This document shows positions 11,164 to 49,917 of a stretch of 64,000 bases of DNA, piece by piece. A program made the position numbers and the translations under genes. The stretch's first letter is position 1, and every line of letters begins with the position of its first letter. The stretch is taken from the NCBI GenBank assembly GCA_964247055.1, contig OZ176055.1, positions 7,378,001 through 7,442,000 on the forward strand, read 5' to 3'. The notes below the pieces were generated by a model that saw nothing but the letters and a program-made list of their open reading frames with translations, did not search any database and was not told the origin of the DNA. The DNA comes from Paragordius varius (Eukaryota; Animalia; Nematomorpha).

Positions 11164-14100
11164 TCAAAGGGAATCCAAATCTAGCGAAGAGTATTCTTCA
11201 TAAAATGCCTAAGATTAAAAAATATATATATAAATAATCTCAATTTTAATTTAATTTATTATAAATGGATGAAGTTATAATCATATATATTATTATAACA
11301 TTTTATAATTCTTAAAAACGTCTAATTGCTATATTAATATGAAACCAAAGGTCCCAGAGGAATCTGAATTTCCAATAATTATAAAAGACATTGTAATAAC
11401 TAAACTTAGTATCTAATTAAATTATTGAGTTAGATACATTTATCAAAATCATTAAAGAATCGAGGATCAACAATATCTGGTCTAATCAGTCATAAGTTAT
11501 CGGTTTAACAAAGAGAAGATGCCATACAGACGATTAATTTACCACTACACTATTTTGTTCATCTAATATGCAAAGACACACAATTAATTCGCCAAAAGCG
11601 TTTTAATTTCATCATTCAGTAACCGAGGTCTCTACCTGAAAAAAAAATTTACGGCACGCATTGGTTTGCTTATTTGATCAAAAGAAAAATGCTGTTTAAT
11701 GTCATTTGCAAAAACATAGAGTCGGCATGTTTCATAGATTAAAACATGTAAAACGGTTTCGAAAATTATTTGTTATTTGAATGTGAATCGTAAAGCAAAG
11801 TTATTGGATAATGATTAAACTCTAACTCATCGGCAATCGATAAAAGTATTGCTTGTATCACATAACTAAACGTTTAAGAGCAAAGAAAAAATCAATAAAC
11901 TCGATAAATAGTCCCACACAATTAACGTCAAATTAAAAATCGCAAAGGAAACTGCTTAACCGTCAGGAAAGGATATTATTTTTGCGAATTTCAACGGGCG
12001 ATGGGAATTAGCTTTATTTTATAAATACAAACGGTAAAAATCCCTTACTTGCCAGGCCTGGCCATAAACACCAATGCCAGCTATAAGCCCATGCTAAGTG
12101 TTTTGGTTAAAAGAGCGGTATTTTGTACAATGGACTTTTGTCCGGTGAAACCGTGAATACAATGCTTTTGCCAACAATAAATAATTTATGCCAAGCATTA
12201 ATTGAAATACGAGTGGAAATCGGTGAGAAGACATGGCAAAGTCATTTTGCCACATTACAATGTCCCCTCCCACACAGCGGAACTAGTGAGTGACACCTTA
12301 TAATACTGTTTAAAGGAATTTCTTACGCATCCGCCATATTCTCCCGACCTAGCGCTATCTGACTATTACCATATAGCAACAATGGGGAGTAAAGAGCAGG
12401 TCTTCAAAAATTTTATAGATGTTAGAAAATGGGTTGCCAAATGGTATGCCGCAAAAGATAATAGTTTTTCCCGATAAGGCATCATACACTACCTGAGAGA
12501 TGGGCGAAATGTGTAGAAGCCAATCGACAATAATTTAATCATAATAAAATATTTATTTCCAAAACTACTAAAGACTTATGACTACACCTAATATATATCA
12601 ACATCTGATAAAAATGCAATAATTATGCTAAAATAGCAAAAATTGCAATTTTATAAAACATGTTACATACTGATATACATCAAAAATCTATTTTAGCAAA
12701 TTAACCAATTCCTTAACCCATTTTTTCTAGAAATTTATTCAAAGCATATAGAAAATAAATTAAAATTTCTTTTTGGAAAACTTCATCAAAATGCCAAAGA
12801 AACCTGAAATAAATCAATGCCTTGGGTTATGCTTGAAGTAGCAATCATTTCTCGTATGCTATGCATAGATAAAAGGGGTCCTCCCACATCAACTGTCGGC
12901 ACATTTAACAAAGCGGCCAATGTTGGGCCAATAGTGCTTCCAGATCGTAAATCATTACGTGTAACAAAATTCTATTTGATTTTAAACATTGTTTTATTGA
13001 AAAAAATATAAGGTATTTTATTGTGATTGCTAATACTTTGTAAAAATTATTGGTAGATAGTATATACACTAAAGAAAGAAAGAATCATTATTATTAGTTA
13101 AAAGTTAGAAAACGCAAAACGATACGTTCTTTCTTTTATGCACCAATATTAATTCGATATAACTCTTTGTAAATGCATATTTAATTAAATAAATAAATTT
13201 TACTTAAACTGTATTATAAATTGGTTTTTGAATAAAATTTTGTGGAAAAAATTTATTATAGTACATACTTGGAGTGTTATATTCCTTTTGTTAGCAATGT
13301 GCTTAAGAACTGAGGCCGAAATGGCTGATGTCGAATATTTTTGTCCAACGTGATATTTAAGGATAAAACCGCCGTCTAATGTGACCCGATGTGCATAATC
13401 ATGCTTTTCGCTAAAATTTATGTTAATATATTTTAGCAAAATATGATAAAAAAACTAATTTTAATATATACGGATAGTTTGGGTGAAACGCATGGCCCTG
13501 ATCTGCACTGATAAGAAAAGATCTTTCAAGAGCCCGTTCAAAAACATCCCCGTTAAATTTGTGAACTGGCTGAGTTGCATTACTTTTTTCAGAGATTGCT
13601 GTTTTTGTCGATTGAAGATTGCTTTGAAAAATTGGATTTTCAGCGATTCGACGTAACGTGGATCGTATAAAATTTGAAGCCGCCCCTTGAGAAGATTTGG
13701 AACCAACCTGGAGTTGCGTGTTTAAATAGGGCAAAAAAGGGATAAATATTTTAAGACAGGTATTAACAATCCATTAAGATTTGCATATTTTGGTTATAAA
13801 TTTTATATATTTTTACCAACAAAATATATACTTAGGAAGTAACAATATTTCATTTTTGCAATTATAAAACACTTAGTCATAATGTTGTTAATAAATTAAT
13901 AGAAAAATAACTACAAATCTATTGAAAAAATATATATATATAAACTTCTTCGTTATCAAACATGGCTAAGACACGGACATATTTTTCATTTTGAATGGAT
14001 GCATCATTGGTAGACAAAAGTCCCTAAATTAATATCAAATTATATGGAAATATAATTTCTACTCATTTAATTTAAAAATTCGGATAGTTATGACTAAGTT

Positions 14101-17100
14101 GAATATTTGACTCAAATATAATTAGAAACTATGGACTTGTCTTGTTAGAACCTGTTTGTTTAATTATACCTAAACTGATATGTACATACTAACGATATTT
14201 AAAGAAAGTGAGATACTTATTATATTAAGTGGGAGTTTTGAACCAAAATAATCGTTAAAAAAATATACCAGCTTATGATACTCATTATTAAGTAATAAAT
14301 TAGCGGTTGACTTATATAAATTTTTCACCATAAATTACGGATGAAAGCATTTTTAATTTATATTGTTAGGTTTGCTCATAACGGGGTTTAAGCGAACATT
14401 ATTAGCATTCATTAATTTTATAGTTATCATAAATATTATACGCAACAATACTCTATTATTTTCAAGTATCGATCCAAATAGTTTTTTAACAGCTACCTTA
14501 AGTAGGAAACAATGTTTTAAACAAAATTTAACAATAACATTATTTCCTATTCGGGAGATATTCTTTATAAACTTTATGAGACTCTTAAGGTGTGTGTTTT
14601 AAAACAATTTCATTTAAATTTAAGAATATTTTATCGCTGTATTTCCAGTGATAACATAAAAAAATATTTAGGGAAATATGAAAGAAACTGTAAAAACATT
14701 TATGTTCACTTCCCTCATTATCCGAAAAAAATTAGTATTTACGCGTTGGAATATATGCAAATAAAATTACAAATATATATAAATATACTTACTATTCGAT
14801 ATACAAATAATTAATAAATGATGTTACATAATTAATATCGTGATAACAAATATAATTAACCTTTAAAGCAGTGTATGTACCCATTAAATTATCTAGCCTA
14901 GGAGCATATATGAATTCATTACGTATTCCACCCAAACTCTAAAAAATATAATACAAAAGAAACAGTTGATTATAAAATAAATAAAACATTATATTAAAAA
15001 AAATTGTTTCTGTTTTAGTTGTATGTAGCGTGCTTTCAATTATTGGGTTTTTCTCCAAGTATAACTAATCTCAATCCACTCTTGTTATCTGAGGCTAAAA
15101 AGATTAAATTTTGGTCATTGATCTGATGTTTGTTTAACTATCCAAAACAATTGCTATCTTTCCTGTGGTTCTGGATGGGACACGAAAAGGCGTTAACGGC
15201 AAAGGTCAGATCTTTAAAGAACTGCAAAATTATTAAGTTAAGGGCATGGCCTTCATTAACCATAAATATTAAGAATAAATTACTGCACAGCCAAAAAAGA
15301 CCATATCATGAAGGTTGAGACTTATGAGTTAGTTAGTTTTTTGTATAGAGTTAAAACTTCAATGTATTGGGTTAAATAATTTATGCAAGGATTTTTCCAT
15401 CTAATTTCGCTTGTTTTTTTCATAGGTCAGATTACGTTGCCATAAAATATACGTGTGACTGTTACCAGGTTGTTTTATTACTTCAATACAATATAATTGT
15501 ATTAAAAATAATAAATAGCCGTTTTGGGAAAACGATGCTCTTATTATTACTGAAATCATTGCATTATATATTCCTGTTAGGGCTTTCTTTGGTTATCAAA
15601 TATGCATAATTAACTTTAATAGTATAATATTCAAATCATCATTTTTAAATTTTAAACCATATTTGGATTTAATTATTTTTCATTATAAGTGGATAAATTT
15701 TATTTCTGTTAAACTGTTTTATTAATGATGGTTTAAAAGCGCTTGAATTGGTTAGAGATTTTTAGGATGATTTGTTTAAAGTTAAACTTTTCGTAGTTCA
15801 TCAGCGAAGGTTAAATTAATTATCTTCATAGTTATTTTATGATTTATTTTGTTTTTTATGTTTAAGTGTTACATTCATCATTCTTGATCGGTATTCAAAT
15901 AACAAGTTCTGATATATTTTTTTCCATATTTTGTTAGCGTTTTTAAAATCAATTTTTCGTTGCTCTAAATCTTCTGTGATTGTTTTGTGTCATGTTTTAA
16001 AGTAACGACTTGGTAGAGCTTTTGAATCTAATTTATAATGCTGCATCTTTTTCAGAATATCATCATTTCGCTCAATGTGTCCTAAATAGCTTAGTCTTTT
16101 GGTTTTGGGTTAAATGATCAATCGAATCTATTTGACAGATTGTGTATACGTCAAAATTATTATCGAAATATATTTGGTTGGGTTAAATGCATAAAGGATT
16201 ATCTTGAGAATTTTAACTTCTGTTCGTAGGATTTTATTTTTAATCAGCGGTCAGGTTTTTGCGCCTTAGGTAAGGGCTGTTCGTATCGCTATAATCTATA
16301 TTTTGGCTTTGGTCTTAACGTTTATAAATTTGTTGTTTTTAATGTGCTTAATTGAATGATATTTTTTCCAAGCTTGGCTGGATCAGTGTTTTATTTCATT
16401 TCTCGTCCAGCGGTTATAACGTGGCTGAGGTATATAAAGAAATCACTGTTTCAATTGCATGGGGGTTACCAAAAAATGGTTTTGTATTTTGAATGGGTTT
16501 CAACTCAATAACGTGTTACATTCATAATATGTATTAGTTAAACTTTACTCATTGAACATAGGCAAAAATACTACCCATAAATACTATCTATTCTTCCATA
16601 TTCCTGTTTTTTAATATTTTTGTCTATTAGTGAATCAATACGAGGCATAATACAAGATGATGCATGAAATTAATATTTAATTGAATACAAAATATTTTAA
16701 ATCTGTTTGTCGCAATAATAACAGTGATGGGTTGATAGAGGGGTTTAGTTTTTGATAATAAATTAATAATTCAAAATGCAATAGAGAAAATATTTTTTAC
16801 TGCTGGTTGCGAATCAGATAAACAAATTTCCATGTCCAGTATATCGTCTGCCTTAACATTCAACTCATCTGCTATCAATTTGATTAGCGGATTAAGTGAA
16901 GTCTCATTCGAAGCATTTCTTCCATTTAATCCTATGACAGGAATTCTGGAATTAATGAAATATATTAATAAAAAAATATAGATAAAAGTTTAAAATTAAC
17001 TTAATCGTAGTTACCACTATTAACATATAAATAAACGCTAAAAAATATAATTAAAAATATAATTTACAGATGTCTTTCTCGATTTATGGCAAATTTATCA

Positions 17101-17727
17101 TGGTATTGGGAATGCAGGTGGATGGCAACAGTAGGGATGCGTAAGAGAAGACGTTTCAAAGAAACAAGTTCGGAATCGATATGATTATTTCGCTGTAGAT
17201 AAATAGTAAAATAAATTATACCCTATAAACAACCAATCCGGCTAAATAAAGGTCCCTATCAAACCATGTATACCAAATTCCACTACCATATGTTTGAACC
17301 AATACTTGCTGATAATTATCCGCCTCTTCAATAAAGTAATTGGGTTTTAACTAGCAAATTAAATAAAATTTAAAAAAATTGAATTTACCCTTAAGTTTGG
17401 ACTATCTACATGCGTGCCAATTATTGAAAAACCTCCATTATCAGAGGTATATTGACCACCAACTATAAATGCAACTAGCGTGGATTTACTTTTAACAATA
17501 AAATACTTTCCGTTTACACGTATTTTAAGAGATTCTGATGGATCTAATTCCGTGAAACCCGCTTCAAGTAAGATTTTAGAAGATGAGTTTACAGCTAAAA
17601 TTAATTTATTTTTACCATGCCATGGGGTTGGAGATTCATCAATAAATTTTAAAAATTTTGAAACATCATCATTTCTTGAATAATGATAAACTAAAAAACT
17701 ACTCAAAAAAATAAAAATATTTCTCAT
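11164..17727 (-). CDS. DNPEP: Aspartyl aminopeptidase (M18 family), 11 exons, about 487 aa
   Basis: Exons: 17727-17616, 17594-17389, 17350-17222, 17192-17068, 16945-16801, 14938-14861, 14023-13946, 13707-13472, 13410-13269, 12971-12804, 11208-11164 (1464 nt, in frame). M18 motifs are all present: [61 protein letters not shown]; C-terminus FQ|[14 protein letters not shown]. The start codon is uncertain. Confidence 0.93.
11474..12594 (+). mobile_element. Degenerate mariner transposon in the last DNPEP intron, antisense to the gene
   Basis: [14 protein letters not shown] at about 12327-12368; C-terminal [13 protein letters not shown]...[12 protein letters not shown]; degenerate TIRs share AGTCATAAGT (about 11488) and ACTTATGACT (about 12574). 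Confidence 0.85.
15950..16460 (-). mobile_element. RTE-clade non-LTR retrotransposon relic (RT C-terminal region) in DNPEP intron 5
   Basis: Broken frame reads FIYLSHVIT...AKLGK...PKYRL...EQKLKF...[13 protein letters not shown], resembling the FKYLGS / KIRLYK / RLRWLGHV motifs of RTE elements. Confidence 0.55.
17193..17221 (-). other. 29-nt micro-intron (DNPEP intron 3)
   Basis: GTATAATTTATTTTACTATTTATCTACAG; required for frame (VVYR|RNNH...LLLRIP). Confidence 0.85.
17351..17388 (-). other. 38-nt intron (DNPEP intron 2)
   Basis: GTAAATTC...TTTGCTAG; required for frame (NLR|LKP). Confidence 0.85.
17595..17615 (-). other. 21-nt GT-AG micro-intron (DNPEP intron 1)
   Basis: GTAAAAATAAATTAATTTTAG. 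Removing it converts [12 protein letters not shown] into the conserved PWHAV. Confidence 0.75.
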
Positions 17728-18077
17728 TTGAATTTAAACTTATGAATGTTTCACATTCAGGTGGAATGAACCTAATCATTATGTGAATTTATTTATGGGG
17801 TTTATATATTTATGGTTAGATCATACGTATTATATCATAAATTAGCAATAAAAATCTGATTAGAATATTTATAAAATTTATGAGCCCAAATATATGCAAA
17901 ACAACGCATTTTGCACATATAATAGATAATTGGAAAAATAAAATTATGTATTTATCGGTGATCCTAATAATTATTGGTAAAAATTCTGCAAAAATTAAAA
18001 TTTGCATTGAAACTATAAGATATTTAAAAATATTTTTTATGGTAAAAAATAGAATAGGGTCATTTTGGGGTAAAAAT

Positions 18078-42004: not shown

Positions 42005-49917
<7,913 letters not shown>

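What the first reader, a model, noticed from the sequence alone, without database searches (positions are those of the whole stretch)
17595..17615. 21-nt, in-frame, stop-free intron in DNPEP
Seen: GTAAAAATAAATTAATTTTAG has a branch-like TTAAT directly abutting TTTAG, so donor, branch point and acceptor fit in 21 nt. Retention would insert GKNKLIL into the conserved SPTPWHAV motif. Established: 3n introns lacking a stop escape NMD and are generally under-represented. Inference: it is either among the shortest spliced animal introns or a retention switch giving two isoforms. Standard gene predictors would read straight through it.
Basis: partly seen in the sequence, partly recalled or inferred. 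Interest (0 to 1): 0.7.

Follow-up and report, generated by a model that had tools for sequence, protein, structure and literature searches.

The report
Ancient DNPEP intron shrunk to 21 bases
The 21 bases sit exactly where aspartyl aminopeptidase genes of sea anemone, limpet and horsehair worm carry an intron, so this is an old intron shrunk to near the smallest size known in animals; its removal from RNA could not be shown.

Summary
Observation confirmed. On the minus strand, 17615..17595 reads GTAAAAATAAATTAATTTTAG inside the first open frame of an intact 10-exon M18 aspartyl aminopeptidase gene (17727..12786). It is 3n and stop-free. Read through, it inserts GKNKLIL after the invariant His of SPxP[WF]H.

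It is an intron by descent:
- None of 136 M18 representatives has an insertion there.
- The same codon and phase (phase 1) holds an annotated intron in both Gordionus genes (44 and 41 nt), Nematostella (473 nt) and Lottia (430 nt).
- The gene's own paralog, 1.5 Mb away, has a 23-nt GT..AG segment at that spot. Read through, it hits TAA, so it must be spliced.
- All nine introns of the window gene share position and phase with these relatives.
- The segment has 10% G+C against 36.5% in the exons.

Splicing itself is inferred. I found nothing for a regulated retention switch. Being stop-free is about a 50% chance event for a 21-nt phase-1 intron of this composition.

Animal introns under 30 nt are published only for myxobolid Myxozoa and Dicyema. 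This scan has already noted 20-32-nt introns many times elsewhere in this genome, apparently a horsehair-worm relative. This is one more member, notable because nonsense-mediated decay could not detect its retention.

The parts
17595..17615 (-). Intron 1 of the M18/DNPEP gene: 21 nt, GT..AG, phase 1, 3n, no in-frame stop, 2 G/C of 21
   Evidence: sequence and frame; 7-aa gap in all homologs; homologous introns at the same codon and phase; composition
17616..17727 (-). Exon 1 (112 nt): ATG at 17727, hydrophobic N-terminal leader, ends ...SPTPWH plus the first base of the Ala codon
17389..17594 (-). Exon 2 (206 nt): (A)[13 protein letters not shown]...[10 protein letters not shown]
17351..17388 (-). 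Intron 2, 38 nt, phase 0. Same position as the Gordionus 39/41-nt, Nematostella 168-nt and Lottia 331-nt introns
17222..17350 (-). Exon 3 (129 nt)
17193..17221 (-). Intron 3, 29 nt, phase 0, obligate (read-through stops after 1 codon). Same position as the Gordionus 47/44-nt introns
17068..17192 (-). Exon 4 (125 nt)
16946..17067 (-). Intron 4, 122 nt, phase 2 (HL|IPVIGL). The acceptor was set by eye
16801..16945 (-). Exon 5 (145 nt)
14939..16800 (-). Intron 5, 1862 nt, phase 0. Holds a multi-copy repeat
14861..14938 (-). Exon 6 (78 nt)
14024..14860 (-). Intron 6, 837 nt, phase 0
13946..14023 (-). Exon 7 (78 nt), ends FDNEEV
13708..13945 (-). Intron 7, 238 nt, phase 0
13472..13707 (-). Exon 8 (236 nt)
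13411..13471 (-). Intron 8, 61 nt, phase 2
13269..13410 (-). Exon 9 (142 nt)
12972..13268 (-). Intron 9, 297 nt, phase 0
12786..12971 (-). Exon 10 (186 nt with TGA at 12788-12786). The 3' end is uncertain, because homologs have one more intron after ...LFK/Q

Best explanation
The 21 nt are a true U2-type GT-AG spliceosomal intron. It is intron 1 of an intact M18 aspartyl aminopeptidase gene and sits at an ancient phase-1 position that predates the cnidarian-bilaterian split. In this lineage it has shrunk from hundreds of bases (Nematostella, Lottia), through about 40 (Gordionus), to 21. It is most likely removed from most or all transcripts, joining CAT G to CT GTA and giving the conserved SPTPWH-AV start of helix 2. 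Shown here: sequence, frame, homology of position and phase, absence of the insert in relatives, intronic composition, and an obligate 23-nt intron at the same site in the paralog. Inferred: the splicing itself, and its mechanism (a GTAAAA donor, the A's of TTAAT 5-6 nt before the 3' end as branch site, and a four-T tract before AG). Because the intron is 3n and stop-free, any unspliced mRNA would escape nonsense-mediated decay and give an enzyme 7 residues longer. I take this as a chance property of the intron, not a designed switch.
For:: PDB DNPEPs align with an exact 7-residue gap at GKNKLIL; of 136 M18 representatives spanning the site, 129 have 12 residues between the His and the G of AGF. 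The other seven, checked by eye, also have 12 or 13. Read-through gives 19; that His is invariant and the Val two residues on is at least 90% conserved in 43 sequences; the paralog has CAC G|GTTATATTTAATTATATTTTTAG|TG GTT, which is 23 nt, at the same codon and phase, and stops at TAA if read through; there are introns at the same codon and phase in the Gordionus P0151 gene (44 nt), the Gordionus P0152 gene (41 nt), Nematostella (473 nt) and Lottia (430 nt); all nine intron positions and phases (1,0,0,2,0,0,0,2,0) match these relatives, and the 1437-nt exon chain has no internal stop; the intron has 10% G+C against 36.5% in exons, and only 1.9% of exonic 21-mers are this AT-rich; there is an obligate 28-nt intron in the V-ATPase A gene of the same window. 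PMC13644364: animals with conventional U2 machinery splice 20-27-bp introns in large numbers.
Against: No RNA evidence. No listed holder of the locus is on record as RNA, and the one guessed RNA run I laid gave nothing. The frame stays open without splicing, so the sequence does not force splicing. My own evidence reaches down only to 23 nt for an obligate intron in this genome. The 20-22-nt cases are other agents' unchecked notes. A branch A only 5-6 nt from the 3' end is unusually close.
Confidence: 0.8

Rival explanations
1. Exonised intron remnant. The old intron shrank to a 3n, stop-free length and is no longer spliced, so the protein carries a lineage-specific 7-residue insert (GKNKLIL) in the first turn of helix 2.
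For: The frame is open through it. Seven residues is about two helical turns, so a helix could absorb it (the site lies in helix 40-53 of the Gordionus model). No RNA shows removal.
Against: GT, the T-tract and AG are intact, and G+C is 10%, as in the neighbouring short introns. None of 136 homologs tolerates any insertion here. The insert would separate the invariant His from the near-invariant Val. The paralog's homologous 23 nt must be spliced.
Confidence: 0.08
2. Regulated retention switch, like an exitron. Both the spliced and the retained mRNA are made on purpose and give two enzyme isoforms.
For: The intron is 3n and stop-free, so a retained mRNA would be stable and translatable. Ultra-short introns can be spliced inefficiently in some lineages (Microsporidia, cited in PMC13644364).
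Against: Being stop-free is about a 0.52 chance event for this length, phase and composition. The peptide has no counterpart in the ortholog, the paralog or any homolog. The homologous introns in Gordionus and in the paralog carry stops. The composition is intronic, not coding. No RNA data were obtained.
Confidence: 0.07
3. Artefact: an assembly error, or a decaying pseudogene in which the 21 nt mean nothing.
For: The gene is more diverged from Gordionus (46%) than its paralog is (61%). Its 3' end differs from homologs.
Against: Contigs from two separate studies contain the segment unchanged. All 10 exons are open, all phases are conserved, and catalytic-region motifs are kept.
Confidence: 0.02

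Closest known systems
Ultra-short (under 30 bp) introns of myxobolid Myxozoa and Dicyema japonicum (PMC13644364, Mol Biol Evol 2026)
   Same: Animal GT-AG introns of 20-27 bp at conserved positions between conserved exons. Splice-site motifs are reduced to about GTa...AG, with a few A's shortly before the AG as the likely branch site, and they cluster with other short introns in the same gene.
   Different: Those lineages have compact genomes. Here the tiny intron shares a gene with introns of 837 and 1862 nt that hold repeats. The organism's nearest relative in the libraries is a horsehair worm (Ecdysozoa), a lineage that paper does not mention. Those introns were supported by Iso-Seq; this one has no RNA support.
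Homologous intron 1 of DNPEP genes: Gordionus (44 and 41 nt), Nematostella (473 nt), Lottia (430 nt), and the same genome's paralog (23 nt)
   Same: Same codon, directly after the invariant His of SPxP[WF]H, same phase 1. In Gordionus P0151 and Lottia even the flanking bases are the same (CAT G|gt...ag|CT GT).
   Different: Length. This is the only one of the six that is 3n, and it is stop-free.
Tiny introns of Paramecium and other ciliates, where 3n stop-free introns are depleted (PMC5014332; PMC8997360)
   Same: Similar size (about 25 nt). The same logic applies: a retained 3n stop-free intron escapes nonsense-mediated decay.
   Different: Those are protists, and the depletion is a genome-wide statistic. 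I could not measure it in this genome. This single case says nothing about selection.
Exitrons: 3n introns inside coding exons whose retention gives a protein isoform (from my own knowledge, Marquez et al. 2015; not checked here)
   Same: 3n, stop-free, and flanked by coding sequence in one open frame.
   Different: Exitrons derive from coding sequence and look exonic. This element derives from an ancient intron and looks intronic, and no retained isoform is shown.

Membership tests
U2-type GT-AG spliceosomal intron | GT at the 5' end and AG at the 3' end, on the coding strand | tested here: met
U2-type GT-AG spliceosomal intron | Removal restores the conserved protein sequence without an indel | tested here: met
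   exact 7-residue gap in all homologs
U2-type GT-AG spliceosomal intron | Position and phase homologous to introns in orthologs and paralogs | tested here: met
U2-type GT-AG spliceosomal intron | Absent from mature RNA | not testable with these tools
   no listed holder of the locus is on record as RNA; only DNA contigs, no joint at 17616/17594.
U2-type GT-AG spliceosomal intron | Branch site and pyrimidine tract | tested here: inconclusive
   TTAAT fits yUnAy and TTTT precedes AG. But the A is only 5-6 nt from the 3' end, and there is no experimental mapping.
Ultra-short (under 30 nt) animal introns | Length under 30 nt in an animal nuclear gene | tested here: met
   21 nt. Animal origin is inferred from metazoan-conserved intron positions and a Gordionus best hit.
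Ultra-short (under 30 nt) animal introns | Other obligate introns under 30 nt in the same genome | tested here: met
   23 nt in the paralog; 29 nt in the same gene; 28 nt in V-ATPase A
Exitron / functional retention switch | 3n length without an in-frame stop | tested here: met
Exitron / functional retention switch | Coding-like composition and conservation of the encoded peptide | tested here: not met
   10% G+C; no homolog has the insert; homologous introns have stops
Exitron / functional retention switch | Both isoforms present in RNA or protein | not testable with these tools
   no RNA run available
M18 aspartyl aminopeptidase (Pfam PF02127) | Matches to the family model over its cut-off along the whole length | tested here: met
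   exon-wise matches covering model positions 1-121 and 271-429; alignment to Gordionus DNPEP over residues 6-492.
M18 aspartyl aminopeptidase (Pfam PF02127) | Conserved metal-site motifs (H.DSP, DNEEVG, SADQ.HA.HPNY, SMHSIRE). That these are metal ligands is from my own knowledge. | tested here: met
   [24 protein letters not shown] and LSMHSIRE are present; the matching columns are invariant.

The most novel reading that the evidence does not exclude
The 21-nt intron is spliced inefficiently. Because nonsense-mediated decay cannot see its retention, a real share of the enzyme carries GKNKLIL in the first turn of helix 2. That would make it a micro-intron working as a protein-isoform switch, or show that this lineage tolerates 3n stop-free tiny introns, unlike the ciliates studied in PMC5014332.
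Probability: 0.12. Interest if true: 0.7.

Novelty: new member of a known kind. Interest (0 to 1): 0.5.

Why it matters
Introns under 30 nt in animals were published only in 2026, and only for two parasite lineages with compact genomes. This locus adds a clean case, anchored by homology, from a third lineage (a horsehair-worm relative): one ancient intron position can be followed from 473/430 nt to 44/41 nt to 23 and 21 nt. Here the tiny intron sits beside kilobase introns full of repeats, so overall genome compaction cannot be the cause. Because it is 3n and stop-free, it is also a handy natural reporter. A 21-nt size shift in RT-PCR, or one diagnostic peptide, would measure how accurately an animal spliceosome removes a 21-nt intron without decay of the unspliced mRNA hiding the failures. 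In practice, standard gene finders will read through it and annotate a false 7-residue insert next to an invariant His.

Tried and rejected
1. RNA evidence. The look-up of sequencing runs listed only DNA-like holders. Read laying on X1, X3, X5 and X6, with 5,101 letters, gave DNA contigs only and no joint at the intron.

2. A protein from this organism's own transcripts. The word search with exon 1 found nothing. The full HMMER search and a word search with the Gordionus ortholog returned nothing above 61% identity to either gene. No product of this species is in those libraries.

3. A census of micro-introns in 264 kb (the window plus 200 kb fetched). I scanned on open-frame length, AT content and a codon log-odds score. 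GT..AG candidates were no more frequent than decoy dinucleotide pairs. Decoys near a true intron also restore the frame, and repeats give long open frames. So I could measure neither the intron length distribution nor any depletion of 3n stop-free introns. Candidates of 18-22 nt, such as a 22-nt one in an N-myristoyltransferase-like gene (L011:7714-7735), stayed ambiguous.

5. A 34-nt candidate in the V-ATPase A gene (48123-48090), picked by the frame scan, was rejected. The next conserved exon lies about 500 nt further on.

6. Exons were searched by reference. Only frame bookkeeping and pairwise junction scoring were done, in local scripts.

Full report
**1. The observation**

The gene is on the minus strand. 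Window 17615..17595 reads GTAAAAATAAATTAATTTTAG. It lies inside the open frame 17727..17359. The read-through translation is [51 protein letters not shown]....

The segment is 21 nt, in frame and stop-free. Removing it joins CAT G to CT GTA and gives H-A-V. The DNA is not an assembly slip: contigs from two separate studies cover it. X1 record 6 spans 16402-17800 with its listed differences elsewhere, and X5 record 19 spans 17174-17678 with none.

**2. What the gene is**

The whole-genome scan with Pfam PF02127 (Peptidase_M18) matched this locus exon by exon. It also found a second M18 gene 1.5 Mb away on the same 10.1-Mb contig. The genome is 110.5 Mb in 44 contigs, and the window has about 26% G+C.

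The best homolog in the 1.84-billion-protein library is an aspartyl aminopeptidase-like protein of Gordionus sp., a horsehair worm. The window gene is 46% identical to Gordionus P0001/P0151. The paralog is 61% identical to the second Gordionus gene, P0152. So the duplication is probably older than the split of the two lineages. I take the organism to be an animal related to horsehair worms. I did not establish its identity.

**3. No relative has the seven residues**

Solved DNPEP structures align to exon 1 with a gap of exactly 7 at GKNKLIL. I then looked at the 136 M18 representatives whose alignment spans the site:
- 129 have 12 residues between the motif His and the Gly of AGF.
- Two have 13.
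- Five appear to have 19-26, but inspection shows their alignments are shifted; counted from the sequences they also have 12.
- Read-through gives 19.

In an alignment of 43 full-length sequences the His is invariant, and the Val two positions later is at least 90% conserved. In an AlphaFold model of the Gordionus ortholog (mean pLDDT 86) the site lies in the first turn of helix 40-53, directly after the SPSP turn. Confidence there is 96-98.

**4. The position is an ancient intron**

I fetched the genomic loci of four annotated DNPEP genes and mapped each protein back exactly. All have a phase-1 intron directly after the His codon plus one base:

| Gene | Intron length |
|---|---|
| Nematostella | 473 nt |
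| Lottia | 430 nt |
| Gordionus P0151 gene | 44 nt |
| Gordionus P0152 gene | 41 nt |
| This genome's paralog | 23 nt |
| Window gene | 21 nt |

The Gordionus P0151 gene reads CAT G|gtatat...attag|CT GTT. The paralog in this genome reads CAC G|GTTATATTTAATTATATTTTTAG|TG GTT at the same spot. That segment is not 3n, and read through it gives SPWHGYI followed by a stop. The paralog, which is otherwise intact, therefore needs a 23-nt intron removed at this very site.

**5. The whole gene model agrees**

I scored junctions against the Gordionus protein, pair by pair, and set one acceptor by eye. This gives 10 exons:
- 17727-17616
- 17594-17389
- 17350-17222
- 17192-17068
- 16945-16801
- 14938-14861
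- 14023-13946
- 13707-13472
- 13410-13269
- 12971-12786

The introns are 21, 38, 29, 122, 1862, 837, 238, 61 and 297 nt. Their phases (1,0,0,2,0,0,0,2,0) equal those at the homologous positions in Gordionus, Nematostella and Lottia. The exon chain is 1437 nt with no internal stop.

The first three homologous introns are 44/39/47 nt in Gordionus and 21/38/29 nt here.

Composition also marks the segment as intron. Its G+C is 10%, like the other short introns (11-17%) and unlike the exons (36.5% overall). Only 1.9% of exonic 21-mers have two or fewer G/C, against 11% of intronic ones.

**6. Can such a short intron be spliced here?**

My own evidence for obligate tiny introns in this genome is:
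- the paralog's 23 nt;
- the 29-nt intron 3 of the same gene, where read-through stops after one codon;
- a 28-nt intron in the V-ATPase A gene of the same window. Its exon 1 ends at residue 27 of the solved chain, its exon 2 begins at residue 29, and the split codon supplies residue 28.

Other agents of this scan have noted 20-32-nt introns at many other places in this genome, one of them with RNA support for a neighbouring gene. These are unchecked leads that agree with what I see.

In the literature, introns under 30 bp in animals are reported only for myxobolid Myxozoa and Dicyema japonicum. There the 20-27-bp length classes each hold at least 1,000 introns, and the U2 machinery is conventional (PMC13644364). 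So 21 nt is within what animal spliceosomes can remove, but near the bottom.

**7. The 3n, stop-free property**

In ciliates, short 3n introns are depleted and enriched in stops (PMC5014332).

As a single case, though, it is not surprising. In a phase-1 intron neither GTA... nor ...TAG falls in frame. With the base composition of the other short introns, a 21-nt phase-1 intron is stop-free in 52% of simulations.

Nothing points to a purpose. The peptide is unknown in any homolog, and the homologous introns in the paralog and in Gordionus carry stops. Some retained transcripts, and hence some enzyme with 7 extra residues next to the invariant His, may exist as noise.

**8. What I could not do**

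- No listed holder of the locus is on record as RNA, and the runs I laid are DNA contigs.
- The species' own proteins are not in the protein libraries.
The length distribution and any depletion of 3n stop-free introns in this genome therefore remain unmeasured.

**9. Verdict**

The element is, almost certainly (about 0.97), an ancient intron reduced to 21 nt. That it is spliced in most transcripts is likely (about 0.8) but not shown. A regulated retention switch is unsupported.

It is a new member of a recently recognised kind, ultra-short animal introns, in a lineage not named in that literature. This scan has already met the class repeatedly elsewhere in this genome. Its particular value is as a natural reporter of splicing fidelity that nonsense-mediated decay cannot mask.

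Noticed in passing
window 49811-49838 (minus strand): The V-ATPase catalytic subunit A gene has an obligate 28-nt GT..AG intron (GTTTGCTTTATATTTTGAAAAATTTTAG, phase 1) between ...YGVSGP and [19 protein letters not shown]. The exons align to residues 5-27 and 29(31)-71 of solved chains.
   Followed up: yes
G000:C6:8920416-8926783 (L010, L002; minus strand): A second, intact M18 gene, ortholog of Gordionus P0152 (61% identity). It has a 23-nt intron 1. It also has a 36-nt intron (3n, with an in-frame TAG) between ...SYTAL and GFIDAMK, where Gordionus has 46 nt. Its other introns are about 400-1100 nt.
   Followed up: partly
window 17670-17727 (minus strand); Gordionus P0151 residues 1-20: The window gene and its Gordionus ortholog both begin with a hydrophobic, signal-peptide-like leader ([14 protein letters not shown] / MKSYLLYVIILKFIV; low pLDDT in the model). 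The other paralog pair lacks it. This may be a secreted or membrane-targeted DNPEP copy in this lineage.
   Followed up: no
window 15949-16119 (inside intron 5): Contig depth rises about eightfold (3977 against about 450 in X1; 1401 against about 100-170 in X3), with many contigs ending there. This is a multi-copy repeat or transposon fragment inside the 1862-nt intron.
   Followed up: no
window 12786-12810 (minus strand): The reading frame ends ...[14 protein letters not shown]. Homologs have a phase-0 intron right after ...LFK/Q and one more short exon (EFYENY...). The bases after CAG here are GTTTCT, so either the last intron is read into and the protein is slightly truncated, or a last exon remains unfound.
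   Followed up: partly
window 12700-17800, runs X1 and X5: X1 shows two haplotypes in the introns (paired contigs at about 200x each, differing by SNPs and indels). X5, labelled as a different organism, holds identical sequence at only 3-7x depth, as if this organism's DNA were a minor part of that sample.
   Followed up: no
L011:7304-7940 (G000:C6:7449304-7449940, minus strand): An N-myristoyltransferase-like gene (FWETQPVP ... IRLDPYPLPPGF). Its first two open frames can be joined by a 22-nt GT..AG segment (GTTTACTGTTATATATTTTTAG). The joined region is not conserved, so a larger intron cannot be excluded.
   Followed up: partly
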